A DNA stretch of 64,000 nt, taken from sequence record MK250019.1; one strand, 5' to 3'. Below are positions 24,063-38,599 of the stretch, piece after piece. The position numbers and the translations under genes were made by a program. The notes beneath the pieces are model-generated. The model worked only from the letters and a program-made list of their open reading frames with translations. It searched no databases and was not told the origin of the DNA. Within the stretch, counting starts at the first letter, position 1. Each line of letters opens with the position of its first letter.

Positions 24063-24067
24063 TAAGA

Positions 24068-24100
24068 AAAGAGGAATAACACCATTTGTTATTCCTCTTT
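24068..24100. terminator. Bidirectional intrinsic terminator
   Basis: 13-bp stem aaagaggaataac/gttattcctcttt. Confidence 0.9.
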
Positions 24101-24104
24101 ATTT

Positions 24105-24386
24105 TTATAGTGACAAATTAATATTCATTAAATCAAATAATTTATTTAATTGATCTGTTGTTTGAACTTCTACTGAAGCAACAGTTTCCATATCATCATT
24201 TTGAATAATACAATTCCAATCTCTACCAATCATATTGGTATGACCATTATTAATTGTTATTGTAAATGTATGATTAATAGGACCTACTGTTTTTGTGAAA
24301 ACATCCATAGATTCAAAATCACCAAATCCACTATCATAATCATATTCAAAATTATGAAAGATTAATAAATCTTTTGTTATATCCAT
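24105..24386 (-). CDS. Hypothetical protein
   Basis: Clean ORF. Confidence 0.7.
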   Translation of the reverse strand: MDITKDLLIFHNFEYDYDSGFGDFESMDVFTKTVGPINHTFTITINNGHTNMIGRDWNCIIQNDDMETVASVEVQTTDQLNKLFDLMNINLSL

Positions 24387-24404
24387 TTTAAAATATATTT
24401 TTAA

Positions 24405-25256
24405 TTAAATATCTTCTTCATATGTATCATCATCCTCGTCATCATGACTATTTAATTTATCATATGAATCCATAATAGCTTGTAATACTTTTTTCCCTTC
24501 TGTAATATATTGTTCATCATAATGCCAGGATTGACCAGCATTTCTTGAATTACAAAAAGTTCCATTCAATAAAGCTAATGTATTAATAAAAGAACACCAC
24601 TCTATTGTAGCATCTGCAAATACATCCCAATTTACTACAGAATTATTATAAAATCCCATAGATCTTGGTAATGTAGATAACAAATTCCATGTATACATAT
24701 TTGGCATATAATCATGATATTTGTCATCTTGTAAATCTGCTTCAATCTTAATACGATCATTTACATTATAATCAAATATATTATCATATGTACCTATTTT
24801 ATGAAGAATTTCTTTCATTAAATCAATGTCATATGTCATTGATTTATATATTGAATACTTCTCATATATAACAGTATATTCATTCTGTTCAGTAGGTGCA
24901 TATCGAGCTTTACTTATTGTATCTAATTTTGTAAATAAATCTTTAACTGCATCTGGTTGTTCATCATATTTTTTATACTTATTCCAGTTATATAAAATAA
25001 TTTCTGTAATTTTGATGAAATCCATATTAAGTTTACCTTTAAGTATTCTTGTAGTTTCATCTTCATCGTAATCATCAAATACACCATAATCGCCCATAGA
25101 ACCTATAACAGGAATATGCATAGGAATTAATGGACTTTCCAAATAACAAGGAATATTTGAAACATTCTTATTTTTCTTACAAATAATAGCTACAGTTGTT
25201 TCACCTCGTTTTATAGGAACTCGTGAAAAAAATCCGGATACACAAAAATCACCCAT
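24405..25256 (-). CDS. Hypothetical protein (283 aa)
   Basis: Clean ORF. Confidence 0.75.
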   Translation of the reverse strand: MGDFCVSGFFSRVPIKRGETTVAIICKKNKNVSNIPCYLESPLIPMHIPVIGSMGDYGVFDDYDEDETTRILKGKLNMDFIKITEIILYNWNKYKKYDEQPDAVKDLFTKLDTISKARYAPTEQNEYTVIYEKYSIYKSMTYDIDLMKEILHKIGTYDNIFDYNVNDRIKIEADLQDDKYHDYMPNMYTWNLLSTLPRSMGFYNNSVVNWDVFADATIEWCSFINTLALLNGTFCNSRNAGQSWHYDEQYITEGKKVLQAIMDSYDKLNSHDDEDDDTYEEDI

Positions 25257-25257
25257 T

Positions 25258-25752
25258 TTATCCTATGTTTTTAATATAATTATTTAAAATATCAGTCCAT
25301 TTTTCATTATCTGCAATATTACAGATATATCGTATTGCACTAGAAAAACAATTTTCTAATGTATTAAAAGACAAATAAGATTCGCCTTCATTAACATGTT
25401 TTTCCCATAGCTGGTTTGCAACAGTGCTTACAGGAATAATAACATATGACCATTCCTTATTTTCTTTACTATATGTTGGTTGAATGATAAAACCCATATA
25501 TTTTTCAAACCAATCAATAACTTCAAAAACAGTAGGTGCTGGAATCCAATTTGCAGATGGATAAGTAATACCCCAATCAGAATTATGTGGTTCCAAATCT
25601 CCTGTATGCCATACACGTTCAGCAGTTGGGTTTTTAGGATCTCCTTTAACTGCTTTAATACCTACAGGTGCCTTTAAATATAAATCTTCAGTATATTCAT
25701 CAAAACCTAAGTTATTAAGAATTACTGATAAATTAAAATCAACATGTTTCAT
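25258..25752 (-). CDS. Hypothetical protein
   Basis: Clean ORF, coupled to its neighbours. Confidence 0.75.
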   Translation of the reverse strand: MKHVDFNLSVILNNLGFDEYTEDLYLKAPVGIKAVKGDPKNPTAERVWHTGDLEPHNSDWGITYPSANWIPAPTVFEVIDWFEKYMGFIIQPTYSKENKEWSYVIIPVSTVANQLWEKHVNEGESYLSFNTLENCFSSAIRYICNIADNEKWTDILNNYIKNIG

Positions 25753-25757
25753 TATCT

Positions 25758-26186
25758 TTATAATTTAATATCATCTGAATTTAATAATGTATTTCTCTTA
25801 TTATCAACAAGAATAAACCGTGCATTAATATATAACAGTTCATTCTTTAATTTTTGAACATCTTTTTTAGATGTATTTTCAAATATAATAAATTTATATG
25901 ACGAAAAATATTCTAATAGTTCTTCAAAAATATTTCTTAATTGTAACATATCACCAAAACGTTCAAAATTATTATAATAACGTTCATGTGGAATTGGTTT
26001 ATTATTACAAATATTTTCTACCAATTCTATAATTTCATCACATTTTTCAAATAACCTTAATATATCATCTTTTTTATCATTATTATGATATTCTGGTTTC
26101 TTTGAATATAAATTCCACATATGACTAAATATATAGCGATATATAGAAAATCTATTATTATAAAACGTTAAATCAATTCTTTCCAT
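25758..26186 (-). CDS. Hypothetical protein
   Basis: Clean ORF directly downstream of a class I promoter. Confidence 0.75.
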   Translation of the reverse strand: MERIDLTFYNNRFSIYRYIFSHMWNLYSKKPEYHNNDKKDDILRLFEKCDEIIELVENICNNKPIPHERYYNNFERFGDMLQLRNIFEELLEYFSSYKFIIFENTSKKDVQKLKNELLYINARFILVDNKRNTLLNSDDIKL

Positions 26187-26200
26187 TTATATATTTTATT

Positions 26201-26236
26201 AATACAAAGATACACATTTATTTTTAAATATAAAAA
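26201..26236 (-). promoter_or_regulatory. Bacteroidota-type (host RNAP) promoter, class I
   Basis: Minus strand TTTTTATATTT-N-TGTATCTTTGTATT contains the TAnnTTTG -7 consensus; one of six copies sharing an exact 14-mer. Confidence 0.8.
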
Positions 26237-26237
26237 T

Positions 26238-26678
26238 TTAACGTGCACGCATTACTTCAAAATATTGTTCAATTAACTTATTAATTAAAAGTTCATATGT
26301 AAATCCATAAGGATTGTTTGGACCAAATACTTTCATATCTGTTGGTGATATAGCATATTGTAATTTCGTATCACCTATTTTTACTTTATTAATATTATCT
26401 TCTGTCAATGGAATATCACTTATATAACTAAATAATCGTATAGTATAAGATTTAAATACAGGAGATAAAAAAATCTTCGCATATAGATATGGTGTAGATG
26501 GTGAATTTAATTTATATACATATGTTTTACCTGCCCAATCATCATATGTAAATAACCATTGTAAAGGATATACATCTTTAAATTCTGGTAATATATCTAT
26601 ATTCGAAACTGATTTAGTTACAATTTCTGGATCTAATTTTGGTTTACCTTTATTTAATAGTTTATCTATTATTTTCAT
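26238..26678 (-). CDS. Hypothetical protein
   Basis: Clean ORF. Confidence 0.75.
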   Translation of the reverse strand: MKIIDKLLNKGKPKLDPEIVTKSVSNIDILPEFKDVYPLQWLFTYDDWAGKTYVYKLNSPSTPYLYAKIFLSPVFKSYTIRLFSYISDIPLTEDNINKVKIGDTKLQYAISPTDMKVFGPNNPYGFTYELLINKLIEQYFEVMRAR

Positions 26679-26682
26679 ATAA

Positions 26683-27345
26683 TTATTCTATAATTTTTAA
26701 ATCATCTGGTATATAACAATCACTACCTAAATATTTGATATATTCTTTAACTGGTTTCTTTACTTTTTTCCAATATGGTAATTTATCATCTTTACTTTGA
26801 TAATAGATATAACTATCAAAATATGTTATTTCCTCTATTTTACCATCATGTTCAACTTTACATGTTTTATAATTATCTTCATCGAAATAGCTTGCAAGAT
26901 CCATCCATACTAATAAATCTTCTAATATCATTATTGAAAATGGTATAGTAATATATGCTGTATTCGTTGTTTTCTTTTCATATATAATATTTCCCATATT
27001 ATCCTTTGAAACTGTTAATCCTTTATAATCGCCTGTAATTTGCCAATTCGGATTATCAATAAAGTATTGTAATAAAAATTCTAATGGTTTTCTTTCTTCA
27101 GGAATTATAGAATAATCTATTGATAAATTATATTCACCAAATCTTAAATTATCTGCTATGCATTGTCTTACATCAATTACTAAACGTTTTCTTTGTTCTT
27201 TATTAAAATTATCAAATTCATATTTTGCTATATTTAATGCATGTTGATGTGCAGCAATAGTATGTCTACCTATTGCATATCTATATGACATCCATACTAA
27301 ATCTTCATGATATGCATTTAAATATTCATCTTTCTATTTTTTCAT
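26683..27345 (-). CDS. Hypothetical protein; probable start at 27345 with TAG at codon 4
   Basis: In-frame upstream ATG gives MKK(Q)KDEYLNAYHEDLVWMSYRY; the alternative start is 27291. Confidence 0.65.
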
Positions 27346-27355
27346 ATAAAATAAA

Positions 27356-27393
27356 AAAGTCTGTTTATATTTTATACAATATAAACAGACTTT
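27356..27393. terminator. Intrinsic terminator downstream of clpP
   Basis: 15-bp stem aaagtctgtttatat/atataaacagacttt. Confidence 0.85.
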
Positions 27394-27400
27394 AGTTTTA

Positions 27401-28090
27401 TTATTTACTAGTTAATATCTTATCAATCATACCCTTTGTTCCGTATGATTTAGCCTCTTCTGAACTCATCCAAAAATCTCTATCAGCATCTTTCTTAATT
27501 CGAGAAAGTGTTTGTCCTGAATGTGTAGATATAATATCATATAATTCATTCTTAAGTCTATTAACTTCTTTACATGTAATCTCAATATCACTAGCTTGCG
27601 TATGTGGTCCTGTAGACGACATTGGTTGGTGGATCATCACACGTGAATGTTTCAATGCGCATCGCTTTCCTTCTGCACCTGCACATAACAAGATACTCGC
27701 CATACTTGCAGCCATTCCAGCACAAATAGTTGAAACATCTGGTCGTATAAGTTGCATAGTATCATAAATCTCAAGTCCTGAATAAACATCACCACCTGGA
27801 GAATTTATATACAGATATATATCTGCCTTTTTATCTGTTGTGTCAAGATATAACAGTTGAGATGCAATAATATTTGCACTATCTGGTGTTACTGGATTAC
27901 CAAGAAAAATAATTCTATCCATCATTAATCTTGAAAAAACATCCATCTGTGAAACATTAAGTTGACGCTCTTCAAGAATTGTAGGATTCTGATAACCATT
28001 ATAAACACCAGATTTATTAATATAATCATGTAAGTATAAACTACTTACACCATTTGAAATCATAAACTTTTCAAAATCTGTTTTTACCAT
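27401..28090 (-). CDS. clpP: ATP-dependent Clp protease proteolytic subunit (host-like)
   Basis: DVFSRLMMDRIIFLG, YINSPGG, AASMAS (Ser), MIHQP (His), RDFWMS (Asp). Confidence 0.95.
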   Translation of the reverse strand: MVKTDFEKFMISNGVSSLYLHDYINKSGVYNGYQNPTILEERQLNVSQMDVFSRLMMDRIIFLGNPVTPDSANIIASQLLYLDTTDKKADIYLYINSPGGDVYSGLEIYDTMQLIRPDVSTICAGMAASMASILLCAGAEGKRCALKHSRVMIHQPMSSTGPHTQASDIEITCKEVNRLKNELYDIISTHSGQTLSRIKKDADRDFWMSSEEAKSYGTKGMIDKILTSK

Positions 28091-28581
28091 ATATTTTTAT
28101 ATTTCTTTCTATAACAATTTTTCAATAATGATGTTACGTGAATATTAGGATAATCACAATGATTATTAGGATTTGTTTCTGTATATATATCAGGATAAGA
28201 ATCTAATATAAATTTAACAACACCTTGTGACCTTGAAATTCCTGCTGAACAATGAACATAAATATCTTTACCTAAATTTCTTTCTATGAAATTAAATAAT
28301 TCATATGCTTGCTCATCTGATAAACCTTTAATTGATTTAGCATATTCAGTTTCCTCTTCTGAAATATCATTTCCATATGCATATGTTAAATCATAATCAG
28401 TAATATCATAGAAATCTAAATTAATAACATTTTCTGCTGAATTAAATATATGATATTCATCTGAAACATTTGGTTCACATATAGAAATTATAGCTACATT
28501 ATTTGGTAAAGTGCGATTATTCCAATTATTCTTTTCCATTAATTTTTTAAATCCATTGAAGGATTCACACCATATCTTCAT
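28084..28581 (-). CDS. Protein-tyrosine / dual-specificity phosphatase-like protein
   Basis: CX5R P-loop VHCSAGISRS. Confidence 0.85.
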   Translation of the reverse strand: MKIWCESFNGFKKLMEKNNWNNRTLPNNVAIISICEPNVSDEYHIFNSAENVINLDFYDITDYDLTYAYGNDISEEETEYAKSIKGLSDEQAYELFNFIERNLGKDIYVHCSAGISRSQGVVKFILDSYPDIYTETNPNNHCDYPNIHVTSLLKNCYRKKYKNIW

Positions 28582-29185
28582 ACTCTTTTATTTGTTTTTC
28601 AATTAACGTACATTCATCCTGATATTTCTTTACAGTTTCTAATATATTATTAATCTGCTTTTTCTTTTTATCTAATTTCTGATTCAAATGTCTAATAATA
28701 AGTTTTTTAATATCTACATAATCCGCAAAAATATTTAAAACTGCATTTCTAAATTGAATTGCACGCTGTAAAATTTCAGATATTTTTGTGTCTGTAATAT
28801 CACAACAAAATATATATGGTAACTTATCATTTAATTCATCACATGTTGACATAAATTTAGATATACAACATGATAATGCTAAATGTAACATAGAAGGTTC
28901 ATATGTTTTTGGTTCATTATCATCTTTATTTGAATCATCTATAATATCATCAAAGAAATCATTAAGCTGATAAAAAATATCTAAACATAAATCTTCTGAA
29001 TCATATATATAATCTCCTAATGTTATATTATAATCCATATAATAATCAGGAATATTTGTTAATATATCACAGTTATAACTACCAAATATATCTAATAAAA
29101 TTTTTGGATACCTTTCAGTTCCTTCTGTTTTACATAAATCAGAAAACTGTTTATATAAAGTTTTTAAATCATCATAACTTACCAT
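28565..29185 (-). CDS. Hypothetical protein
   Basis: Clean ORF with C-terminal coiled coil. Confidence 0.7.
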   Translation of the reverse strand: MVSYDDLKTLYKQFSDLCKTEGTERYPKILLDIFGSYNCDILTNIPDYYMDYNITLGDYIYDSEDLCLDIFYQLNDFFDDIIDDSNKDDNEPKTYEPSMLHLALSCCISKFMSTCDELNDKLPYIFCCDITDTKISEILQRAIQFRNAVLNIFADYVDIKKLIIRHLNQKLDKKKKQINNILETVKKYQDECTLIEKQIKEYEDMV

Positions 29186-29188
29186 AAT

Positions 29189-29884
29189 TTACTTCAATTT
29201 ATCTTTAAGATTAATTAATGTATTATTTACATTCATTGTAAAATGAAAAATTGCTTCTTTTGCACATTTATTAATATAATTATACAAATCAGTTTTTGTA
29301 ATAAAATCCATAGATTCTTCTGAATTCATCCATGACTTTGTAATAACTGCATCATGATTGCTTATAAATTTATATTCAATATGATCCCAATTATCACCGC
29401 ATAATCTGAACTCATCATAATTTATCCACACTCTATTCATTTTAATATCTACTGACTTTAACATGATATATGTTTCATCAAAATCAAAATAGTTATCATC
29501 ATATGAATTATCACCTTGTGTTATATTCTGATAAAAGATACAATTAACATCTCTTATTACTTTACCAGTATCAATATAATTATGAAGAATATAATCTCTT
29601 AATTCTATATTGTACTTTGATGAAAAATCAGTAACAGGACATTCATTTGCAATATACTCTAAACGATATAATGGTATATATCTAATATCTTCATTATTCA
29701 CATTCAAATAACGTCGTTTTACTAGTTTAAATGTATATGTATTTTTACCTATTTGAATTGTTACTTCTTCTTTTGCACAAAAATCTTGATATGTATGTAA
29801 TTTATTAAGTAGTAACTTTATATAATTAGTTACCATTTCATTTCCAAGATTATCTATAGGAATTTCATAATATTCGTATTTCAT
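29189..29884 (-). CDS. Hypothetical protein
   Basis: Clean ORF. Confidence 0.7.
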   Translation of the reverse strand: MKYEYYEIPIDNLGNEMVTNYIKLLLNKLHTYQDFCAKEEVTIQIGKNTYTFKLVKRRYLNVNNEDIRYIPLYRLEYIANECPVTDFSSKYNIELRDYILHNYIDTGKVIRDVNCIFYQNITQGDNSYDDNYFDFDETYIMLKSVDIKMNRVWINYDEFRLCGDNWDHIEYKFISNHDAVITKSWMNSEESMDFITKTDLYNYINKCAKEAIFHFTMNVNNTLINLKDKLK

Positions 29885-29961
29885 ATAACTAACTTAATTT
29901 AATAATTAAACAAAAATAGAGATTAAGAATTTATAAACAATCTTAATATCTATATAATTCT

Positions 29962-30165
29962 TTACTTATTACTTGATGAACGAATAGGAAATAGTAATCG
30001 TGAAACTGCCATCAAACACATTGCATGAATATATGTAATCTTTGGAAGACCAAAAACAAATGGCATTACATAATTCCAGCAAATCATAAAAAAGATTGCA
30101 CCAATTATAATACAAATAATTGAAATAATTACGATTCCTACAAGTTCAAATAAATGTTCCTTCAT
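29962..30165 (-). CDS. Small membrane protein
   Basis: 67 aa with two hydrophobic segments. Confidence 0.7.
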   Translation of the reverse strand: MKEHLFELVGIVIISIICIIIGAIFFMICWNYVMPFVFGLPKITYIHAMCLMAVSRLLFPIRSSSNK

Positions 30166-30273
30166 ATTACTTATTATTTTTGTTTATTATTTGTTTTATT
30201 ACTTAATAAACAATATAAAATAGAGGATATAATTTCTCTTTTATATCGTTTTTTAGCATATCTACCTTTTGAT

Positions 30274-30513
30274 TTAACTAAGGTTTCTTGTTTCATTTTT
30301 CTCATTATTATTGTAATAATTTATTAAATCAGCTTTCATTTCTTTACGAAACTGAGTATCTCTCTTTCTATTTCTAATTACTCGATCTTCTGCAATTTCA
30401 CAATTATAACGTCTCCATTTATTTAAAATAGAACGTTTATACTTAGGTTTAATTTTACCTTTATTGTCATGCATATAATCATACGCAGCTTGCTCTTTAA
30501 AATTATTACTCAT
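30274..30513 (-). CDS. Small basic hypothetical protein
   Basis: Clean ORF. Confidence 0.6.
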   Translation of the reverse strand: MSNNFKEQAAYDYMHDNKGKIKPKYKRSILNKWRRYNCEIAEDRVIRNRKRDTQFRKEMKADLINYYNNNEKNETRNLS

Positions 30514-30544
30514 TGTATCTTATATATAATTTTAGTAATGTCAG

Positions 30545-31330
30545 AAAAAGAAAAAATTAAACTTCATAAATTTGCGTTTCAAAAATTTGCTGCTACTTAC
30601 CAAATCTACAAATATGAAGTTTAATCATTTGTATTAATCTATACTGCAGAAAAATTATTATAGTATAAGTTTCATTGTAATTGAACTTTACAACTATAGT
30701 GATAATCCACTTATACCTTCTTTTACTCTAAAGACTTTTATATGCAACTTCGACATATGTAATTTATCTACATACCGTTTACATTAAAGTTACTTTATTT
30801 CATCATGCTTTTATAACCATATTCACAACCCTCTGTATATCACCGATTCATTTCTTTTCATATAGAAATCAGGGTCTTTAAGCCTCACTGTCATTGGCTA
30901 TAACTATTATCCTCAAGCACTACCAGATAAAGTCTTTTTGTTTTTATGGTGCATCTCTCATGCCTCCTTTTATCATAAAACAAACAAAACTAGTAAGACA
31001 AATAACGTTTCTTACAACTCCTACGAATTTAACTCCAAAATTAAGATACATCTCTTAATATTAAGTTGGACACTTAAATTAAGTGGATAAAGTTGTACGA
31101 CTTGAAAATATAATCACCAAAAGAATAATAATATTTTCTCAGACTTTATCATAAACGATTCACTAAATTCTTTTATGGAACTTATTTCTAATTAAATGAG
31201 GACTCATTTAAAATAGGTTCTCCCGAAACATGCGGTTTATCCATACTCATTTAAAACTTTAAATAAGCGTTGTTTATAGCACTCATCAGAATTTATTATG
31301 TATTAACATTTATAACACATCATTTGTATT
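30545..31330 (-). ncRNA. Candidate large structured ncRNA C (about 780 nt), family unidentified
   Basis: No ORF in the track between 30514 and 31501. Many helices, e.g. gataaagtct 30926-35 with agactttatc 31141-50, taaatgag/ctcattta, gtataagt/acttatac. A terminal hairpin aaacttcata...tatgaagttt is followed by a U-tract. Promoters and a boxA-like leader lie upstream. Confidence 0.6.
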
Positions 31331-31346
31331 TAATTATTCTATATAA

Positions 31347-31375
31347 CTTATATAGATATAAACACAAATTGTTTA
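31347..31375 (-). promoter_or_regulatory. Sigma70-like promoter (class II) upstream of ncRNA C
   Basis: TAAACA-N17-TATAAG. Confidence 0.45.
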
Positions 31376-31432
31376 ATAATCTAATAAACAAAATTATTAA
31401 TATTATGTTATCTTAATGTTAATTAAGAAAAA

Positions 31433-31444
31433 ATTTCAAAGAAC
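31433..31444 (-). promoter_or_regulatory. boxA-like antitermination element
   Basis: GTTCTTTGAAAT, identical to 37495-37506; resembles the bacterial rRNA-operon boxA. Confidence 0.5.
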
Positions 31445-31461
31445 ACTTTGTTTTTAATAAC

Positions 31462-31497
31462 AATACAAAGATACACATTATTTTTGAATTAAAAAAA
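31462..31497 (-). promoter_or_regulatory. Bacteroidota-type promoter, class I (points into the ORF-free region)
   Basis: Exact AATACAAAGATACA 14-mer plus the A-tract seen in the other copies. Confidence 0.8.
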
Positions 31498-31522
31498 TAT
31501 ATTGAAGAAAAAATTAATATTT

Positions 31523-32350
31523 TTATTGAACCCATGCAGATGCATATCCATTTTCTACTTTTATAATAAGGACTTCACCATTCAACCATGTATGTTCAAG
31601 ATCATAACCTTCATCTTCACTTTGCATATCTTTATACTTAGTAAGAATAAAGTTTGTAATCTCTTCAATACTTCCCTTATGATATTCAGATGTATTCAAT
31701 AATTTCAAATAATCAACATACTCTCTTGCATTCTTCATACAAGAATCAATATCCTTAAAACATGTAGTATCTATATATTCATTATTTCTATTAATAATAG
31801 ATGCAACAACACCATTAGCTAACAATTTAGAGATATTAGTAATATCCTCAAGTTTTTCGAGTTTTTCAAATTCATATTTTAACATATGTTCTGAATCACT
31901 ATCTCTATAACGTTTAATATTAAGAGTTACTGAATTCCACGTATCTACCCATGTTTTAATTGCATCTTCAATATATCCACCAAAATCATTATCACCAAAT
32001 TCAAAGGTAATCATGAAACTCTTATCAATAATATTATTATCACTAAGTTCATATGGATCACCTTTAAATTTATGTCCTTGATATAAACCATCCAAATAAG
32101 CAGTTGATATAAGATTATTAATATCTGACATTAAAGAAGGCATGAATGTTTCTTTTTTATCTTCTGATATATCATCAAGTACAATAGATGTATCAATAAT
32201 AGCTTCTATATGCTTCTTGTTATCTTTGATATATTGATTTGCAAAATCAACAAACTTCTTTCCGTATACATCAATATTCATCTTATTTACACCCTCTGCT
32301 AAAGTTTCATTAAGATTTTCTAATTCTTTCTTTATATCTACTTTTTCCAT
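31523..32350 (-). CDS. Hypothetical protein (275 aa)
   Basis: Clean ORF. Confidence 0.75.
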   Translation of the reverse strand: MEKVDIKKELENLNETLAEGVNKMNIDVYGKKFVDFANQYIKDNKKHIEAIIDTSIVLDDISEDKKETFMPSLMSDINNLISTAYLDGLYQGHKFKGDPYELSDNNIIDKSFMITFEFGDNDFGGYIEDAIKTWVDTWNSVTLNIKRYRDSDSEHMLKYEFEKLEKLEDITNISKLLANGVVASIINRNNEYIDTTCFKDIDSCMKNAREYVDYLKLLNTSEYHKGSIEEITNFILTKYKDMQSEDEGYDLEHTWLNGEVLIIKVENGYASAWVQ

Positions 32351-32369
32351 AATAAATTTTATTTAAATA

Positions 32370-33305
32370 TTACATTGATCCATCATTTGGCTGCAAACAC
32401 ATAATACCATGTTCTCTCCACATTTTTACTACTTTTGAAGAATCTTCCAAAACAAATAATACATTATAATATGGTTCAATAAATGTTTTATATAGGTTAT
32501 ACTTACAATCTGGGCCCTTTGTAAAATTCTTATATGGTCTCATCATAACCATATCTACATCACCATCCAAATTATTTTTTAACCATGTTTCAGTTGCTTT
32601 TCGTATATCAGGTGTATCTTCTCTACCTGTTAAAATAATAACTTTTACATTATCATCTTTAATATACTTATTAACTAACTTACAAATTTGTTCACATGGT
32701 ACATCATTTGTCATTGTATCAGAAGCGCCATTACCATAAAATGGTCTACCTTGCAAATTAAAACAAAGTGTTGCATCCATATCTACAAGAATACAATCTT
32801 TCTTATCCTTATCATATGGAACAAAACTATTATATTGCTTCTTATTAAGCTCTGTTGCTATAAAATTTCTATATTGACTATATGTTCTCTTAATAACAGA
32901 TTCTCCAATTGGATTTGTTCTCATTGAATCTCGCCTAATACACTCTTCAACTGAAACATCAAAGAAATCTTTAAATACAAGTTCATATTGATATTTAGTA
33001 TGTGTATTATTATAATTATCAATTCTATCCTGCATTTCTTTCCATCCCTTTGGATTAAGGTTCATATTATCCATAATAATATTTAAACCATTTTCCATTG
33101 ATGATTTAAAAAATGCATCAGTCATTTCTTTAATAATGTTTAATTTTTCTCTTTTCTCTACCCAATACTGTCCAAACATATTTCTAAGAGAATCCCAATT
33201 AATTCTAATTCGTTCTGTTGGTTTTTCCTTTGCCCATTGTTCTGCATAAGTTGACTTTCCAGAAGCTTGAATTCCCCTTGTTAATATAATTTCTCTTTTT
33301 TCCAT
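32370..33305 (-). CDS. pseT: Polynucleotide 5'-kinase / 3'-phosphatase (T4 PseT-like)
   Basis: N-terminal P-loop GIQASGKST, DSLRNM, C-terminal HAD motif DMDATL and LED. Confidence 0.9.
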   Translation of the reverse strand: MEKREIILTRGIQASGKSTYAEQWAKEKPTERIRINWDSLRNMFGQYWVEKREKLNIIKEMTDAFFKSSMENGLNIIMDNMNLNPKGWKEMQDRIDNYNNTHTKYQYELVFKDFFDVSVEECIRRDSMRTNPIGESVIKRTYSQYRNFIATELNKKQYNSFVPYDKDKKDCILVDMDATLCFNLQGRPFYGNGASDTMTNDVPCEQICKLVNKYIKDDNVKVIILTGREDTPDIRKATETWLKNNLDGDVDMVMMRPYKNFTKGPDCKYNLYKTFIEPYYNVLFVLEDSSKVVKMWREHGIMCLQPNDGSM

Positions 33306-33323
33306 TATTCTTTTTATTTCTAT

Positions 33324-33863
33324 TTAAAATTCATAACCAATACCAATATACCAATTGTATTTTGTATATGTACCTTGGATATTTACATGATTAATATTAA
33401 ATACTACAGCGGCACCATAATCAAGTCCTTCTACTTTTTCATCGATATTAAACTTATTATGAATACCATTACGGTCACAACTCCAATTATAACCATCTGT
33501 TGTACCAGTTGCATCATATGCATAACCTACCATAGGAATAATTCGCAACCAATTAGTTACAGGAACCTGATAACCAAGATGACATGTTATCGCTTTATCA
33601 TCATCCCAAACATCTACATCTACATCACTTCCATGCATACTAGGCCAACCGCCAAAATCAGCATATACACCTTTAATAGTTGTACTTACCAAAAATTCCT
33701 GTAAACCAAGATCCTGTGAACAACCAATACCTCCAAAATGTATAGCCATATTAAATGTATTATTTGCTTTCTTAAATACATCTTTATATGAATTTTGTGC
33801 CATAACATTATTAACACATACAAATGAAAGCAATACAGTCAGCATTATAATAATTTTCTTCAT
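33324..33863 (-). CDS. Outer-membrane beta-barrel protein
   Basis: Sec signal peptide (..VMA/QN), alternating beta-strand pattern and C-terminal YIGIGYEF BAM-type signal. Confidence 0.8.
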   Translation of the reverse strand: MKKIIIMLTVLLSFVCVNNVMAQNSYKDVFKKANNTFNMAIHFGGIGCSQDLGLQEFLVSTTIKGVYADFGGWPSMHGSDVDVDVWDDDKAITCHLGYQVPVTNWLRIIPMVGYAYDATGTTDGYNWSCDRNGIHNKFNIDEKVEGLDYGAAVVFNINHVNIQGTYTKYNWYIGIGYEF

Positions 33864-33905
33864 AATTTTTATTTTTAATAATTAAACTTATTGTTCTTTA
33901 TTTAC

Positions 33906-33940
33906 AATACAAAGATACATATATTTTTCCTAAATAAAAA
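33906..33940 (-). promoter_or_regulatory. Bacteroidota-type promoter, class I
   Basis: Exact 14-mer copy upstream of the OMP gene. Confidence 0.8.
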
Positions 33941-33967
33941 ACATAAATCTAATTATTTTCCTAAAAA

Positions 33968-34180
33968 TTATTCATTATCCATTGACATCCCTATAGTTGC
34001 ATTTCTCATACAATCTAAATAACCTTTCGTATATAATGATTTCATATGTTCATGTAACTTCTTTAATTTATCCGGTATATCTGTTTCTATATCTTCTGAA
34101 ATTTTATCATCACCAAATAAAGATATAAGTGAAACTCTTGATTTATAATCAGCAATATTTTTTAATTTTTCTATATTCAT
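33968..34180 (-). CDS. Hypothetical protein
   Basis: Clean ORF. Confidence 0.65.
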   Translation of the reverse strand: MNIEKLKNIADYKSRVSLISLFGDDKISEDIETDIPDKLKKLHEHMKSLYTKGYLDCMRNATIGMSMDNE

Positions 34181-34191
34181 ATTTTAAATCA

Positions 34192-34887
34192 TTATAAGTT
34201 AGATAAGACTAAACCTAAACAATATTCGTTATTAATATCACAAATAAATTTATTAAGTTGACCTTTTAACATTTCAGTGTTTATTTCAAATTCTTCTAAT
34301 ATCTCTTTTTCTTTCTTTATAGTATTAATATCTGTTTCTTTCAAATAACTATAAGTATCTTTAGTCTTAAAATTAATATTAGATATTGTATCATTTCTGA
34401 TAGAATTTATAATTAACATTACAGATAACTCATATGTATTTTCATTTAATGCTGAACCATGATAACCACATATACCTTTATTTTTCAGTTCAAAAAATAC
34501 AGGGCCATAACAGTATTTTCCTTCATGTACAATAGTTCCCAATGATTTCAAACCAAATGTCTTACATATATTAAACTTCTTATCAAGATAATCATTAAAT
34601 AATTTATTAATAAACATCATCTGATATGAAATAAAGGTATCAGCATTTAATTCTAATTTAAAATGTGTCTTATCTAAAATATCATACATTAAATCTTGTA
34701 TATTCATATCACCTAATTCTTCTTTATATAAAGATGATAAACACATATATAATCTATGTAATGTTTCTTTAATATCATAATTAATATGAACATTTTTCAA
34801 TTTATTTTCATAATAATTTAGAATTGATTTATTAATTAATGTTGCTGCATTATCAATAAAATATTTTCTATTTTCATCATATGTCAT
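34192..34887 (-). CDS. Hypothetical protein
   Basis: Clean ORF. Confidence 0.7.
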   Translation of the reverse strand: MTYDENRKYFIDNAATLINKSILNYYENKLKNVHINYDIKETLHRLYMCLSSLYKEELGDMNIQDLMYDILDKTHFKLELNADTFISYQMMFINKLFNDYLDKKFNICKTFGLKSLGTIVHEGKYCYGPVFFELKNKGICGYHGSALNENTYELSVMLIINSIRNDTISNINFKTKDTYSYLKETDINTIKKEKEILEEFEINTEMLKGQLNKFICDINNEYCLGLVLSNL

Positions 34888-34900
34888 ATAATTTAAAAAA

Positions 34901-35098
34901 TTATTTTTCTTTCATTCGTCTTAAGATATGTTTAGGTTCTGTATAATAAAAATAATCTTTTGTATTATCATCGATAATATTAAGATTGTATAATGCTTGT
35001 GAAAACCTTATATCTTTATATGTAGTGAGATATTTCTTCAGTATATCTAATATTTCCATATTAGCCTTATATCTCTCAAATGTTTCTTTATCTTCCAT
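34901..35098 (-). CDS. Hypothetical protein
   Basis: Clean ORF containing RFSQAL. Confidence 0.65.
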   Translation of the reverse strand: MEDKETFERYKANMEILDILKKYLTTYKDIRFSQALYNLNIIDDNTKDYFYYTEPKHILRRMKEK

Positions 35099-35140
35099 TT
35101 AAAATAACGGATTAATTTTTATTTCATCTGTTTTAGAATA

Positions 35141-35497
35141 TTAAGTTACATTTAATCTCAATGTTTCATTTAACCATTCTGCAATTAAATGTCTATGACA
35201 AAATTCATCTGGTTTTTCAAAACAACATAATGCGCAGTCATTTCCATTAGATATAAATTTAATTCTATCTACAAATATAGATGGATCTTTAAATAAAGAT
35301 AAAACTTCATTTTTATATCGTTTTCTGAATTCCTGATGATTAGATCTACAGTTATTTAATATATCAGGTGTAGGAGCAATTGCTATTAAATTAGGTCCAT
35401 GAAAATCTTTTGGTGGATAACAGCATATTCCTATTGGAACTATATTATTCTCTTTTAATTTCTTTAGATTTCCAAAATAACTCGTATATATCTTCAT
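35141..35497 (-). CDS. DUF488-like protein
   Basis: IYTSYF, LCCFEKPDEFCHRHLIAEWL. Confidence 0.7.
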   Translation of the reverse strand: MKIYTSYFGNLKKLKENNIVPIGICCYPPKDFHGPNLIAIAPTPDILNNCRSNHQEFRKRYKNEVLSLFKDPSIFVDRIKFISNGNDCALCCFEKPDEFCHRHLIAEWLNETLRLNVT

Positions 35498-35500
35498 ATA

Positions 35501-35716
35501 TTATTTAAAAATATCTTCTAATTTTTTATATTCATCTTTTGATATATCATATTTAACAACTGAAGATGAATGAGCAGAACTCAAAGTATTACAAGTATCT
35601 ATATGGTAAGAATTATCATATCTATCAAGATAAAAACGTACTATACATGAAATATTAATATAACCGGCACTTTTTGTATATATAAATTTTGTCTTATTAT
35701 TCTTCAACTTTATCAT
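35501..35716 (-). CDS. Hypothetical protein
   Basis: Clean ORF. Confidence 0.6.
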   Translation of the reverse strand: MIKLKNNKTKFIYTKSAGYINISCIVRFYLDRYDNSYHIDTCNTLSSAHSSSVVKYDISKDEYKKLEDIFK

Positions 35717-35776
35717 AGTATAAAAACATTATTATATATTTTTTATATAATATTAAATTGATTTTGTTTAATATAA

Positions 35777-36100
35777 ATGGCAGGTTTTGTATATCTTATT
35801 TGTAACCCTGATTAGAATTGTTATAAAATCGGAGTAACAAGGGATTTAGCATAGAAACGATTAAAATAGTTATAGACAGGAAATTCATCAAAATTACATA
35901 TAGTTCATTCTGTATATAGTGAATATCCATTTAGGTTAGAATCTATGTTACATAAAACATTTGATTCAAAACGTTCTGAAGGTGAATGGTTTAATTTAGA
36001 ATAGAAGGATGTAATTAATTTTAAAGATATATGTAATGAAAAAATTAATATTATTAATATTATGAAAGATAATCCATTCTTTAATAAAGATTTAAAATGA
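35777..36100 (+). CDS. T5orf172/MUG113-like GIY-YIG-superfamily protein, 107 aa, 5 in-frame TAG (absent from the ORF track)
   Basis: GFVYLI...YKIGVT...KRLK(TAG)L(TAG)TGN...ESMLHKTF...GEWF; ends at TGA 36098. Confidence 0.88.
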
Positions 36101-36412: not shown

Positions 36413-36436
36413 TTTATTTTTTATTATAATTTAAAT

Positions 36437-36475
36437 AAAAAAGATGTTATTAAATTGTGAAAATTTAATAACATC
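36437..36475 (-). terminator. Intrinsic terminator closing the ncRNA A/B unit
   Basis: 13-bp stem gatgttattaaat/atttaataacatc followed by a U6 tract on the minus strand. Confidence 0.8.
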
Positions 36476-36529
36476 AAGAACTTATGAAAAACTGCTTAAA
36501 AATATTCTATTCTTTTTATGGAATATGTT

Positions 36530-36945
36530 TTAGATTTTTGTACAAACATAAGGTTCTGCCCCTTATGATTCATTTTAACGTTTGCTCGTTATAATGAATG
36601 TTCATACTGAACTTTGTTATGTCCATGAGGACAAATGGCTGAGAACTTGACCAACACCGACTCTCTATGCTGTAACGTTGGAGTTACATGTTCACACAAC
36701 TCTTATTTCTAAGAGGTAGAGAGCATACCCACGACTTTTGTGAAAAATCGTAAACTCTTACTTGATAGGTTTCATAGAAATTCATTTCATACCAACTTCC
36801 TTGGAAGGATTCAATATGTCCCCACATTTAGCACGATACTACTTTTACTATTCTCATGTCTTTCCTTGCGGTACTCGAATCATGTCTACATATTTCAGTA
36901 GAATAAGGGTATTTTAACCACCAAGTGTCGCACACTTTTGCTTTT
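36530..36945 (-). ncRNA. Candidate structured ncRNA B (about 410 nt), family unidentified
   Basis: About 40% GC in 36601-36720. Nested hairpins include ctctta-GAAA-taagag, cc-GCAA-gg, ctctcta/tagagag, tgtaac/gttaca, cataagg/ccttatg and ctac-TGAAATAT-gtag. No ORF. Confidence 0.7.
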
Positions 36946-37009
36946 GTATAATTTATATACTTAAATAATGTAATCCTAATATTATTATTCTTTATATATT
37001 ATATTTGAT

Positions 37010-37510
37010 TAGACTTGAAAGACGAGGTGCGACCAATAGCATTTCTTCCTTTTGAGAAGAATCCACTAAATCGCCTTTCTGAATTTACATTGCACCATAC
37101 AATCATAATTCTACTCTTATAACTTAACTACATATTTCAGTAGTAATCTTACCATTTCTGAACAAGTTACCAGCTTGCATGGATTATTTGGTTTATAATC
37201 CATATAAGATTCATTATAACAATTAATATCAGCACTGGGAATTGGTATTCCGATCACCGAATATCCATAAACATAAACCTATTGTATTACTACTCACATC
37301 AGTTGTATATTTCACTTCCAATGTATTTGAACTTCATCTCAGAAAGTTTTCCCTTGATTTCCCATTCAAACAGGTTATTTATGTTTGGTTTTCTGTAGAA
37401 TGCTCATTATTCATAAACATCAACCAACATGTCTACTGTTGATTTTTATTACATCACTGCTTTATCCTTAACTCCACCGAAACCATGGATTCATATTTCA
37501 AAGAACTCAT
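37010..37510 (-). ncRNA. Candidate structured ncRNA A (about 500 nt), family unidentified
   Basis: Hairpins atggatta/taatccat, ttcttc/gaagaa, tattc/gaata and ctac-TGAAATAT-gtag. Begins with the boxA-like element, downstream of a promoter. Confidence 0.62.
37495..37506 (-). promoter_or_regulatory. boxA-like antitermination element
   Basis: GTTCTTTGAAAT, identical to 31433-31444. Confidence 0.5.
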
Positions 37511-37546
37511 TTAAAATGAAATAATCTTCAAATTAAATTGTTATTA

Positions 37547-37575
37547 TTTATATAACCTATAATTTAAAAAGTCTA
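37547..37575 (-). promoter_or_regulatory. Sigma70-like promoter (class II) for the ncRNA A/B unit
   Basis: TAGACT-N17-TATAAA, about 40 nt upstream of the boxA-like element. Confidence 0.6.
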
Positions 37576-37764
37576 TATTTTAATCAAAAAATATTTTATT
37601 TTTTTAATTACTTTATTAACTATATGTGTCTTTATCTTCTTTTAATTAATAAAATATGATTTAATTAAAAACTTAATAATTTAGATTATCAATATGTTTC
37701 AAATTTAAATATTATATATGATAATAGAATAATTGTCTATATTTTATAGAAAAAATTTAAAAAA

Positions 37765-37941
37765 TTATTTTAAACAATATTCTAAATCAAAAATAAAACT
37801 CCCTAATAATTCAATTTTATGTCTAATAAGTTCTGCTTCAAAATTAAATTTATGTTCTGAACAAAATGATAATTCAGATAATAATTTATTTCTTTCAGTT
37901 TTCCACTTATTTATTAAATCATCTTTAGATAACTCTTCCAT
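37765..37941 (-). CDS. Small hypothetical protein (58 aa, below the track cutoff)
   Basis: MEELSKDDLINKWKTERNKLL...EYCLK-TAA, co-oriented with its neighbours. Confidence 0.6.
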   Translation of the reverse strand: MEELSKDDLINKWKTERNKLLSELSFCSEHKFNFEAELIRHKIELLGSFIFDLEYCLK

Positions 37942-37966
37942 AATACATTTTCTTCAATTTATTTCA

Positions 37967-38242: not shown

Positions 38243-38262
38243 TTTATATTATAAATTAAAAA

Positions 38263-38472: not shown

Positions 38473-38599
38473 ATGAATATAATATTTAATATATTTTTAA
38501 TATTTGAAAAAATCTACCTTCAAAAAAGAAAGAACCAAAGAAAAATAATTTTTAATCAATATTTAATTAGATTTATAAATTAAATTTTTTACATATATT

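What the first reader, a model, noticed from the sequence alone, without database searches (positions are those of the whole stretch)
30545..31497. Second ORF-free unit (candidate ncRNA C, about 780 nt) with its own promoters and the same leader
This is a roughly 1-kb gap in an otherwise tightly packed genome. One of the six conserved host-type promoters (31462) points directly into it. Next come the identical 12-mer GTTCTTTGAAAT (31433-44) and a sigma70-like promoter. The region has long-range helices (gataaagtct 30926-35 with agactttatc 31141-50, enclosing about 200 nt) and ends in a long hairpin plus U-tract at about 30545-30625. Two promoter types would allow expression both early and later in infection.
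Basis: partly seen in the sequence, partly recalled or inferred. Interest (0 to 1): 0.8.

Follow-up and report, generated by a model that had tools for sequence, protein, structure and literature searches.

The report
Conserved large noncoding RNA in Lak megaphage
The 1-kb gene-free gap in this gut megaphage (Prevotella phage Lak-A2) most likely encodes a large, abundant, evolutionarily conserved structured RNA that matches no known RNA family, adding a new example to the few large phage RNAs whose functions are still unknown.

Summary
The window is Prevotella phage Lak-A2. The gap 30514-31522 is real and has no credible ORF under code 11 or 15. It is one of only three gaps of 450 nt or more in 64 kb.

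On the minus strand it holds, in order:
- one of six copies of a conserved promoter motif with a Bacteroidota-type -7 box;
- a fast-evolving ~120-200 nt leader;
- a ~655-nt core (31315-30660);
- a long hairpin plus U-tract (30623-30545).

The core is 85% identical between Lak-A and Lak-B, against 60-69% for three neighbouring genes. Its indels are not multiples of three. An RNAalifold structure over four lineages has 148 pairs, 11 of them with compensatory changes. Held-out lineages keep the pairs on the minus strand only. In two metatranscriptome runs, contigs over the core are 10-100 times deeper than those over most flanking genes. Devoto et al. had already reported highly expressed Lak intergenic regions.

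No Rfam family matches, and each genome carries one copy.

Function is unknown. I favour a stand-alone, trans-acting RNA, possibly partnered with the small basic protein encoded just downstream.

The parts
31458..31475 (-). Conserved promoter motif TGTATCTTTGTATTGTTA. It contains TATCTTTG (31473-31466), which fits the Bacteroidota -7 box TAnnTTTG, and it is preceded by a conserved T-rich/A-rich stretch up to about 31500. The inferred transcription start is about 31460.
   Evidence: Six copies in the window against 0.56 expected, and more than 30 copies in a sister genome. The other five window copies sit 10-38 nt upstream of ATG codons of minus-strand genes. The consensus comparison rests on my own knowledge of Bacteroides promoters. 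The start site is inferred, not mapped.
31433..31450 (-). Small 5' hairpin CAAAG-UGUU-CUUUG (31450-31437). Alternatively GTTCTTTG is a second -7-like box, 21 nt downstream of the TTTG at 31469-31466.
   Evidence: Helix 1 keeps pairing in all 16 sequences that have it, through C-G to U-G and A-U to G-U changes in Lak-B. It is thermodynamically weak at -3.1 kcal/mol, z -0.16. The only other exact copy of the 12-mer lies in the other ORF-free unit, at 37495-37506.
31316..31432 (-). Fast-evolving 5' leader between the promoter and the conserved core.
   Evidence: It is 67% identical between Lak-A2 and Lak-B2. It is replaced by an unrelated, ~90-nt-longer sequence in the L016/L047/L048/L050 variants and shortened in L024. 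Metatranscriptome and DNA contigs break at 31317 for this reason.
30660..31315 (-). Conserved core of the RNA, about 655 nt and about 20 helices.
   Evidence: It is 85.4% identical between Lak-A2 and Lak-B2, against 59.8% for the upstream 275-aa gene. Indels of 1, 1, 2, 17, 1, 9, 2, 1, 2 and 2 nt fall within it. RNAalifold pairs are 99.9% kept. There is no Rfam match. Contig depth in RNA libraries X4 and X6 peaks here.
31245..31268 (-). Hairpin H4, GCUUAUUUA/UAAAUGAGU.
   Evidence: Two pairs change on both sides, with pair types U-A, A-U, C-G and U-G across lineages.
31071..31085 (-). Hairpin H9, CACUUA-AUU-UAAGUG.
   Evidence: A-U changes to G-C in L024, and U-A changes to U-G in Lak-B.
30984..31024 (-). 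Hairpin H11, GUAGGAGUUGUAAGA/UCUUACUAGUUUUGU.
   Evidence: G-C changes to C-G in Lak-B, and three further pairs are kept through one-sided changes.
30948..30967 (-). Hairpin H13, GGAGGCAU-GAGAG-AUGCACC, with a GNRA-like loop.
   Evidence: One pair runs through C-G, U-G and U-A across lineages. The loop reads GAGAG, GAAAG or GUGAG, which always fits G-N-R-A. The loop reading is my inference.
30795..30983 (-). Central multi-helix domain (H12-H18) and the most conserved part of the RNA. It includes GAGGCUUAAAGACCCUGAUUUCUA and GUGAUAUACAGAGGGUUGU, both invariant or nearly so.
   Evidence: Mean column identity is 96% over 11 distinct sequences. An extra helix, GCUU (30917-30914) with AAGC, changes to GGUU with AACC in Lak-B. 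Covariance model R1 of this domain finds exactly one significant copy (E about 1e-42 to 1e-49) in each of three phage genome records, besides one chance-level hit at E 0.1.
30663..30716 (-). 3' domain hairpins H19 and H20, GUAUAAGU...ACUUAUAC enclosing GUUGUAA/UUACAAU.
   Evidence: G-C changes to A-U in L024 (H19) and in L025 (H20).
30545..30623 (-). Long 3' hairpin (30623-30558) with a conserved apical loop GUAAGUAGCAG, followed by the U-tract AAUUUUUUCUUUUU. It is an intrinsic-terminator-like end of the RNA.
   Evidence: It folds at -18.1 kcal/mol (z -2.65) in Lak-A2 and -18.4 (z -4.31) in Lak-B2. Four stem pairs change on both sides between A and B. The consensus terminator scan did not flag it because the stem is G+C-poor and the loop is long.
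30274..30513 (-). Gene for a 79-aa basic protein (pI 9.85), starting 31 nt after the U-tract. It is a possible partner of the RNA or is co-transcribed with it.
   Evidence: It follows the RNA in every lineage where the downstream sequence is known. It is 85.9% identical in nucleotides between A2 and B2. Homologues exist only down to 78% identity. The model is mostly one long helix, with pLDDT 71. One lineage (L060) has the gene without the RNA directly upstream.

Best explanation
The gap is a single-copy gene for a large structured noncoding RNA of Lak megaphages.

Host RNA polymerase starts at a Bacteroidota-type promoter, at about 31460 on the minus strand. It transcribes a poorly conserved leader and then a ~655-nt multi-helix core (31315-30660). 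Most transcripts stop at a long hairpin plus U-tract (30623-30545). Some read through into the genes for a 79-aa basic protein and a 67-aa membrane protein.

The RNA accumulates to high levels in infected Prevotella and acts in trans through its folded shape. I think a scaffold or decoy is most likely, perhaps bound by the small basic helical protein encoded just downstream.

Shown here: there is no coding capacity, sequence is conserved beyond most neighbouring genes, base pairs covary in a strand-specific way, each genome has one copy, and no known RNA family matches.

Suggested but not proven: high abundance in RNA libraries.

Inferred: the start site, termination, trans action and the protein partnership.
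For: 1. No ORF under code 11 or 15. The longest antisense open frame shows 19 of 21 changed codons as nonsynonymous, with differences spread 9/10/9 over codon positions. Core indels are mostly not multiples of three.
2. The core is 85.4% identical between Lak-A2 and Lak-B2. The 275-aa, 231-aa and 67-aa genes are 59.8%, 66.5% and 69.1% identical. Devoto et al. give 61-65% ANI for A against B over the ~70-kb region they aligned.
3. Over 17 distinct copies in four lineages, RNAalifold gives 148 pairs with 99.9% of cells paired. Eleven pairs change on both sides, against 6.0 +/- 1.3 in shuffles (0 of 500) and none in any slid control.
4. When a lineage is held out, changed pairs on the minus strand are kept/broken 7/3 (L024) and 6/2 (L025). 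On the plus strand the figures are 2/10 and 3/6. Fisher p = 0.004. This fixes the RNA sense as the minus strand, the same strand as the promoter and the U-tract.
5. The promoter motif is repeated six times. In the other five copies it drives protein genes with short leaders.
6. In metatranscriptome runs X4 and X6, contigs over 30612-31366 have depth 110-3800. Over most flanking genes the depth is 2-37. The first ~500 nt downstream (30008-30611, holding the 79-aa and 67-aa genes) are intermediate. Runs X2 and X7 are flat.
7. [quoted passage not shown]
8. No Rfam family matches, even at E up to 10. Each of three phage genome records holds one significant copy.
Against: - The core's minimum free energy is no better than dinucleotide shuffles: z -1.17 in Lak-A2 and -1.61 in Lak-B2. 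A coding control gives -3.18.
- Only four lineages exist, at 78-92% pairwise identity. Compensatory events therefore number about a dozen, and the long-range helices (H2, H12) are invariant and untested.
- The consensus structure was derived from the same alignment on which the pairs were counted.
- The expression evidence comes from Logan contigs, which give one depth figure per contig, carry no strand and show no ends.
- A protein gene starts only 31 nt after the U-tract and has no recognisable promoter of its own, which also fits a cis-acting leader.
- The RNA was found only in a narrow Lak subclade. Phages with more distant homologues of the neighbouring 275-aa gene lack it.
Confidence: 0.6

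Rival explanations
1. The region is a very long cis-acting 5' leader (an attenuator or riboswitch-like sensor) of the operon that begins with the 79-aa gene. The structured core senses a signal, and the 3' hairpin plus U-tract is the expression platform that sets read-through.
For: The 79-aa ORF starts 31 nt after the U-tract and has no promoter motif of its own. The RNA is followed by this gene in all four lineages. In X4 and X6, contigs over 30008-30611 are deeper (about 17-129) than contigs over most other flanking genes (about 2-37), but shallower than the core. That pattern fits partial termination.
Against: A 655-nt core with about 20 helices is several times larger than any known leader or riboswitch (own knowledge). 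The 120-200 nt nearest the promoter, and the linker just before the hairpin, are the least conserved parts. No alternative antiterminator pairing was evident. In lineage L060, a 78%-identical homologue of the small protein sits 38 nt behind another gene with no such leader.
Confidence: 0.22
2. The region is a decayed gene or neutral spacer. It looks conserved only because the segment was recently exchanged between Lak lineages by recombination.
For: Devoto et al. describe extensive recent recombination, though among Lak-B genomes. The core's folding energy is not better than shuffles.
Against: Conservation is patchy on a helix scale. Invariant blocks alternate with variable hairpins and small indels, which does not fit a uniformly young segment. 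Substitutions in predicted stems keep pairing and do so on one strand only. No lineage has an ORF here. Depth in RNA libraries is high.
Confidence: 0.05
3. The region is a DNA-level element, such as a replication origin, a packaging site or a protein-binding array, rather than an RNA gene.
For: It is an AT-rich, ORF-free region with inverted repeats. Both strands of the whole gap fold better than shuffles.
Against: The cumulative GC skew shows no inflection here. There are no repeat arrays beyond the promoter motif. G-U-mediated conservation of pairs is specific to one strand, which a DNA element would not show. The region is over-represented in RNA libraries but flat in DNA-like ones.
Confidence: 0.04
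4. The region encodes one or more small proteins, or a protein read in an unrecognised genetic code.
For: Stop-free stretches of 68-100 codons exist on the plus strand in every lineage.
Against: Those frames lack ATG starts and are broken by frameshifting indels between lineages. Their substitutions are 19 of 21 nonsynonymous with no third-position bias. They lie on the strand opposite to the promoter and to all neighbouring genes.
Confidence: 0.03

Closest known systems
GOLLD RNA (Rfam RF01998)
   Same: It is a large phage or prophage noncoding RNA of unknown function, often more than 800 nt, and its expression rises during lytic growth. It has a well-conserved 3' part and a less conserved 5' part (PMC12286853). 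Here too a variable 5' leader precedes a conserved core.
   Different: The covariance model gives no match even at E up to 10. GOLLD usually lies near tRNA islands, whereas ARAGORN finds no tRNA in this 64-kb window. The hosts also differ: Lactobacillales, Actinomycetota and marine bacteria against Prevotella. Oligomeric cage formation was not tested here.
ROOL RNA (Rfam RF03087)
   Same: It is a large ornate phage or prophage RNA, reported to be as abundant as 16S rRNA, with no known protein partner or function (PMC12286853; PMC5737381). Size and abundance are comparable here.
   Different: The covariance model gives no match. This RNA is not near tRNAs. No pseudoknots have been established here. 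Its distribution is very narrow, limited to one Lak subclade.
OLE RNA with its protein partners (Rfam RF01071)
   Same: It is a large structured RNA of about 600 nt that works as a ribonucleoprotein with small proteins encoded next to it (own knowledge, and PMC12286853). The adjacency of a small basic protein gene here is analogous.
   Different: The covariance model gives no match. OLE is a chromosomal RNA of extremophilic Firmicutes, not a phage RNA. The partnership here is only inferred from gene order, and one lineage has the protein gene without the RNA next to it.
[quoted passage not shown] 2019; bioRxiv 10.1101/356790)
   Same: This is the same genome family and the same phenomenon: regions of up to ~1.5 kb without genes or tRNAs, some among the most highly expressed parts of Lak-A1/A2 in metatranscriptomes. 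This gap is very probably one of them.
   Different: The text I could read gives no coordinates, boundaries, strand, structure, conservation analysis or family assignment. The figures are not held, so I could not confirm that this particular gap is among those shown.
Riboswitch or attenuator leaders
   Same: The order is promoter, structured RNA, hairpin plus U-tract, then a gene on the same strand.
   Different: The core is several times larger than known leaders. No Rfam cis-regulatory family matches, and no alternative pairing was identified.

Membership tests
GOLLD / ROOL / OLE / HEARO / raiA and all other Rfam 15 families | A match to the family covariance model at or near the gathering score. 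| tested here: not met
   The whole window has 0 matches at gathering thresholds. At E up to 10, the region 30400-31600 gives only two chance-level hits, mir-737 at 19.8 bits and SNORD82 at 15.8 bits.
GOLLD / ROOL | Frequent location beside tRNA genes or tRNA islands in phages. | tested here: not met
   ARAGORN finds no tRNA or tmRNA in the 64-kb window. Intron-containing Lak tRNAs might escape ARAGORN.
Conserved structured noncoding RNA (generic) | Base pairs are maintained by compensatory and wobble substitutions across homologues, more than controls give. | tested here: met
   Eleven pairs and 34 cells change on both sides, against 6.0 and 8.2 in shuffles (0 of 500) and 0 in slid controls. 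Held-out lineages keep 13 of 18 changed pairs on the minus strand and 5 of 21 on the plus strand. Power is limited by having only four lineages.
Conserved structured noncoding RNA (generic) | Folding energy lower than that of dinucleotide shuffles. | tested here: not met
   The core gives z -1.17 (Lak-A2) and -1.61 (Lak-B2), and a coding control gives -3.18. Only the whole gap, with the leader palindromes and the terminator, gives z -3.05. This measure is known to discriminate poorly (own knowledge).
Protein-coding gene (including code 15, TAG=Q) | An open frame conserved across homologues, with codon-periodic and mostly synonymous substitution. | tested here: not met
   There is no ORF of 55 aa or more. 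Indels shift the frame. In the best antisense frame, 19 of 21 changed codons are nonsynonymous, with differences spread 9/10/9 by codon position.
Bacteroidota primary-sigma promoter | A -7 box TAnnTTTG, with a -33 TTTG about 19-21 bp upstream (own knowledge of the Bacteroides consensus). | tested here: inconclusive
   TATCTTTG at 31473-31466 fits the -7 box exactly and is conserved in six copies that precede genes. Its -33 region is T-rich but has no TTTG. A second candidate has the TTTG 21 nt upstream of GTTCTTTG but lacks the TA. No 5' ends were mapped.
   Twelve sites were found against 11.5 +/- 3.0 in shuffles.
Intrinsic terminator | A stable hairpin directly followed by a U-tract on the transcribed strand. 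| tested here: met
   The hairpin 30623-30558 (-18.1 kcal/mol, z -2.65) is followed by AAUUUUUUCUUUUU. Lak-B2 has the same architecture, with four compensatory stem pairs. The simple consensus scan does not report it because the stem is G+C-poor and the loop is long. Termination itself was not measured.
Self-splicing intron (group I or II) | Interrupts a gene whose exons join into one frame, with the conserved catalytic core present. | tested here: not met
   The flanking ORFs are complete and separate. Homologues of the 275-aa protein have the same length in phages without the element. There are no Rfam intron matches.
Riboswitch or attenuator leader | A cis position upstream of the regulated gene, with mutually exclusive terminator and antiterminator folds. 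| tested here: inconclusive
   The cis position is met, since the gene starts 31 nt after the U-tract. No alternative fold was identified. The protein gene exists without the leader in L060.

The most novel reading that the evidence does not exclude
This is the founding member of a new class of large 'ornate' phage RNAs, specific to gut megaphages that infect Prevotella. Like ROOL and GOLLD, it would be among the most abundant RNAs in the infected cell and would work through an elaborate tertiary or quaternary architecture. That could be a homo-oligomeric assembly, or a ribonucleoprotein with the adjacent 79-aa basic helical protein, that captures a host component such as ribosomes, an RNA-binding protein or a defence factor. 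Together with the second conserved ORF-free unit at 36413-37966, it would mean that Lak megaphages devote several kilobases and much of their transcription to structured RNAs.
Probability: 0.3. Interest if true: 0.8.

Novelty: new variant of a known kind. Interest (0 to 1): 0.62.

Why it matters
Only a few large structured RNAs (over 500 nt) of unknown function are known in bacteria and phages, namely OLE, GOLLD, ROOL and HEARO. Recent cryo-EM work showed that some of them form unprecedented RNA-only cages.

A new, unrelated ~0.65-kb conserved core from a human- and animal-gut megaphage would widen that class to Bacteroidota phages. It also gives a concrete, bounded sequence for structure determination and for transcript mapping.

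It would further explain part of an observation left open in the original Lak paper, the highly expressed gene-free regions. And it gives a handle on how half-megabase phages take over Prevotella, a dominant gut genus for which no Lak culture system exists.

Tried and rejected
SEARCHES FOR MORE DISTANT HOMOLOGUES
- Three exact-pattern scans of IMG/VR, one of JGI metagenomes and one of GTDB genomes returned only Lak-A-like or Lak-B-like copies, or chance 17-20-mers (L038, L039, L057-L059).
- Walking from homologues of the 275-aa neighbour added two lineages, L024 and L025. Phages whose homologues fall between 36% and 89% identity carry other genes at this position and no RNA.
- Walking from the 79-aa protein added only the 3' end of the L025 lineage, plus one RNA-less context (L060).
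- Covariance model R1 found no paralogue or distant copy in the window, in 23 loci or in four phage genome records.

FAILED OR UNINFORMATIVE CALLS
- The genome search on 'own' and on ENA loci was not possible.
- My first hand-typed dot-bracket string had the wrong length.
- My own shuffle script timed out, so I used strand folding instead.
- The first paper search was badly worded and useless. One paper reading had too many terms.
- Loci L024 and L025 were briefly masked in my scripts by alignment rows with the same names. This was corrected.

THE 79-AA PROTEIN
- It has no PHROG or NCBIfam family.
- The Atlas returns only its own cluster.
- The AlphaFold model is a single long helix at pLDDT 71. 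That is too featureless for a fold search, so I ran none and did not attempt a complex prediction.

REJECTED READINGS
- A hammerhead ribozyme, suggested by the CUGAUGAG at 31288-31281. There is no Rfam hit, and I saw no GAAA core after the adjacent stem.
- RNase P-like, suggested by GAGGCUUAAAGACCC. There is no Rfam hit.
- An intron, a replication origin and a coding gene, as set out under the rival explanations.
Full report
IDENTITY OF THE WINDOW
The window is 100% identical to Prevotella phage Lak-A2 (MK250019.1); window position equals record position minus 62000. It is 98-99% identical to Lak-A1 and Lak-C1. The query stretch, window 29800-32400, aligns with the baboon Lak-B genomes at about 73%. 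G+C is about 25%, and nearly all genes around the finding lie on the minus strand. Lak phages read TAG as glutamine (Devoto et al. 2019), so I checked every coding question under tables 11 and 15.

THE GAP
The minus-strand ORFs 31523-32350 (275 aa) and 30274-30513 (79 aa) leave 1009 nt between them. That stretch has no ORF of 55 aa or more in any frame under either code. With ATG-started ORFs of 70 aa or more under code 15, the 64-kb window holds only three gaps of 450 nt or more: this one, 36413-37966 and 38243-38967. The 'tightly packed genome with a 1-kb hole' is therefore correct.

ANATOMY ON THE MINUS STRAND
- Promoter. The 18-mer TGTATCTTTGTATTGTTA (31475-31458) occurs six times in the window, always on the minus strand, against 0.56 expected. 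With its T-rich upstream flank it recurs more than 30 times in a sister genome. It contains TATCTTTG, an exact fit to the Bacteroides -7 box TAnnTTTG (own knowledge of that consensus). In the other five window copies an ATG follows within 10-38 nt, so the motif is a working promoter for ordinary genes. Here it faces about 945 nt without an ORF.
- The 12-mer. It is the 3' arm of a small hairpin, CAAAG-UGUU-CUUUG, whose pairs survive in Lak-B through C-G to U-G and A-U to G-U changes. The hairpin is weak at -3.1 kcal/mol. GTTCTTTG could also be a second -7-like box, because a TTTG sits 21 nt upstream. I cannot decide between these readings without 5'-end mapping.
- Copies of the 12-mer. It has only one other exact copy in the window, at 37495-37506 on the minus strand. 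That copy lies inside the other large ORF-free unit. The count with one mismatch allowed is not above chance.
- Sigma70-type sites are at chance level, 12 found against 11.5 expected. The idea of 'two promoter types' has no support.
- Leader. A fast-evolving leader follows (31432-31316). It is 67% identical between A and B, is replaced wholesale in the L016-type variants and is shortened in L024.
- Core. The conserved core runs from 31315 to 30660.
- 3' end. After a short variable linker comes a long hairpin (30623-30558; -18.1 kcal/mol, z -2.65) with a conserved apical loop, then AAUUUUUUCUUUUU. Lak-B2 has the same architecture (-18.4 kcal/mol, z -4.31) with different stem letters.
- Downstream gene. 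The 79-aa ORF starts 31 nt after the U-tract.

HOMOLOGUES
I collected 28 copies, 17 of them distinct, in four lineages:
- lineage A: the window, Lak-A1, Lak-C1, and IMG/VR and ENA contigs;
- L025: 88-91% identical to A;
- L024: 83-90% identical to A;
- lineage B: about 80% identical to A.

Scans of IMG/VR, JGI metagenomes and GTDB genomes with invariant 17-22-mers gave nothing outside these lineages except chance matches. Phages whose 275-aa homologues fall between 36% and 89% identity carry other genes at this position. They give no blastn, nhmmer or covariance-model match. A covariance model of the central domain finds exactly one significant copy in each of three phage genome records, one of which is rated complete, besides one chance-level hit at E 0.1. 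The element is thus a single-copy feature of a narrow Lak subclade.

NOT CODING
Indels between A2 and B2 inside the core are 1, 1, 2, 17, 1, 9, 2, 1, 2 and 2 nt. Stop-free stretches of 68-100 codons exist on the plus strand. They shift frame between lineages. In the best one (30894-31058), 19 of 21 changed codons are nonsynonymous, and the differences fall 9/10/9 on the three codon positions.

CONSERVATION
A2 against B2:
- core: 85.4%
- 275-aa gene: 59.8%
- 231-aa gene: 66.5%
- 67-aa gene: 69.1%
- polynucleotide kinase gene: 79.9%
- 79-aa gene: 85.9%
Devoto et al. give 61-65% ANI between B and A1 over the ~70-kb region they aligned. Within the core, invariant blocks of 20-25 nt alternate with variable hairpins. 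This is the usual pattern of a structured RNA.

STRUCTURE
- RNAalifold on the 17 sequences gives 148 pairs in 22 helices, with 99.9% of cells paired. Eleven pairs have changes on both sides. About 19 pairs are kept through one-sided wobble changes. Only 2 cells are broken.
- Shuffling partners among sequences gives 6.0 +/- 1.3 such pairs (0 of 500 reach 11). Sliding the partners by 1-3 columns gives none.
- Because the structure was derived from the same alignment, I also held out each lineage in turn. On the minus strand, changed pairs are kept/broken 7/3 (L024), 6/2 (L025) and 22/31 (B, where the training set is shallow). On the plus strand the figures are 2/10, 3/6 and 11/30. Fisher p is 0.004 for the first two lineages and 0.007 for all three.
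- A structure from Lak-A2 alone gives the same asymmetry: 30 of 69 changed pairs kept in B2 on the minus strand, against 11 of 53 on the plus strand.
- The best-supported helices are H4, H9, H11, H13, H19, H20 and the 3' hairpin H21/H22. An extra helix also covaries, GCUU/AAGC changing to GGUU/AACC in B.
- The H13 loop reads GAGAG, GAAAG or GUGAG, which always fits G-N-R-A.
- The long-range helices H2 and H12 never vary, so they remain untested.

A NEGATIVE RESULT
The whole gap folds better than shuffles on both strands (z -3.05 and -4.72). The conserved core alone does not (z -1.17 in A2, -1.61 in B2). A 656-nt piece of the neighbouring coding gene scores -3.18. I give this little weight, because the statistic evidently does not separate RNA genes from coding sequence in this AT-rich genome. 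It does mean that the case rests on comparative evidence.

EXPRESSION
- Devoto et al. wrote that, even with code 15, regions of up to ~1.5 kb encode neither proteins nor tRNAs. [quoted passage not shown] The text gives no coordinates or analysis.
- Logan contigs of public runs hold the stretch. In two metatranscriptome runs from different studies, contigs over 30612-31366 have depths of 374-3800 (X4) and 110-248 (X6). Depths are about 2-37 over most flanking genes and about 17-129 over 30008-30611, the first ~500 nt downstream, which holds the 79-aa and 67-aa genes.
- X7 (labelled RNA) and X2 (probably DNA) are flat at about 10-17.
- Contig depth is one figure per contig and carries no strand or end information. 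This is suggestive, not proof. The gradient fits strong transcription of the RNA with partial read-through.

NEIGHBOURHOOD
- Two genes upstream is a T4-type polynucleotide kinase/phosphatase (phrog_505, E 2e-59).
- Five genes downstream is ClpP.
- The 275-aa, 79-aa and most other neighbours have no family.
- The 79-aa protein is basic (pI 9.85, 20 K+R), is predicted to be mostly one long helix (pLDDT 71), and has homologues only down to 78% identity.
- It follows the RNA in every lineage. One lineage (L060) has it behind a different gene with no RNA within 3 kb.
- A partnership with the RNA is therefore a hypothesis from gene order, not a finding.

COMPARISON WITH KNOWN SYSTEMS
- No Rfam 15 family matches at gathering thresholds over the window, or at E up to 10 over the region. 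That excludes membership of GOLLD, ROOL, OLE, HEARO, RNase P, tmRNA, 6S, introns and riboswitch families as currently modelled.
- In kind it resembles GOLLD and ROOL: large phage RNAs, abundant, of unknown function, recently shown to form RNA-only cages (PMC12286853; PMC5737381).
- Unlike them it is not near tRNAs, infects a different host phylum and has a very narrow distribution.
- I found no paper that characterises this RNA.

VERDICT
This is a real, conserved, probably abundant structured noncoding RNA of about 0.9 kb with a 655-nt core, on the minus strand. I put about 0.85 on 'a functional RNA element'. I put about 0.6 on the fuller statement that it is a stand-alone, trans-acting RNA rather than a cis leader, which I rate at about 0.22. 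It is a new family within a known kind of element.

Noticed in passing
window 36413-37966: A second, larger ORF-free unit (1554 nt under code 15) lies 5 kb away. It is 84% identical between Lak-A2 and all nine Lak-B genomes, with a ~640-nt insertion in B. It carries the only other exact copy of GTTCTTTGAAAT (37495-37506, minus strand). It shares no sequence with the RNA studied here apart from that 12-mer. It is probably another conserved noncoding RNA.
   Followed up: partly
L001:1148-2281 (Lak-A1), inserted at window ~30307-30320; also in L003/L015/L018 (IMG/VR 3300045988_158995 and _163103): Lak-A1 and some relatives carry a ~1.5-kb insertion that Lak-A2 lacks. It lies at the 3' end of the small basic protein gene and shortens that protein to 70 aa. 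It encodes a 377-aa TnpB RNA-guided endonuclease (NCBIfam IS200_TnpB, E 6e-114) whose frame contains 17 TAG codons read as glutamine. This is a recoded mobile element inside a recoded phage.
   Followed up: partly
window 31316-31432 versus L016:4940-5140 and L047, L048, L050: The leader between the promoter and the conserved core exists in two unrelated versions within lineage A. The longer version contains an 18-codon ATG-started frame. Assemblies break here at 31317 because the two strains are mixed.
   Followed up: no
window 26197-26214, 33902-33919, 42166-42183, 45362-45379, 50481-50498 (all minus strand): These are five further copies of the promoter motif TGTATCTTTGTATTRTWA. Each is preceded by a T7-8 run and an A-rich stretch and followed within 10-38 nt by a start codon. 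The same ~50-nt module recurs more than 30 times in a sister genome. It is a genome-wide promoter class with a Bacteroidota-type -7 box.
   Followed up: partly
window 32370-33305 (minus strand): A T4-type polynucleotide kinase/3'-phosphatase (phrog_505, E 2e-59; Pfam AAA_33 + HAD_PNKP on homologues) lies two genes upstream of the RNA. It is an RNA-repair enzyme in a phage whose tRNAs are reported to carry introns. No link to the RNA was tested.
   Followed up: no
window 24000-36000: Genes around the RNA contain almost no in-frame TAG codons (the 'odd' counts are 0 for nearly all long ORFs). ORFs from about 50582 onward use TAG=Q heavily (5-7 codons per gene). The RNA therefore sits in a standard-code block of the genome, presumably one expressed earlier.
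   Followed up: no
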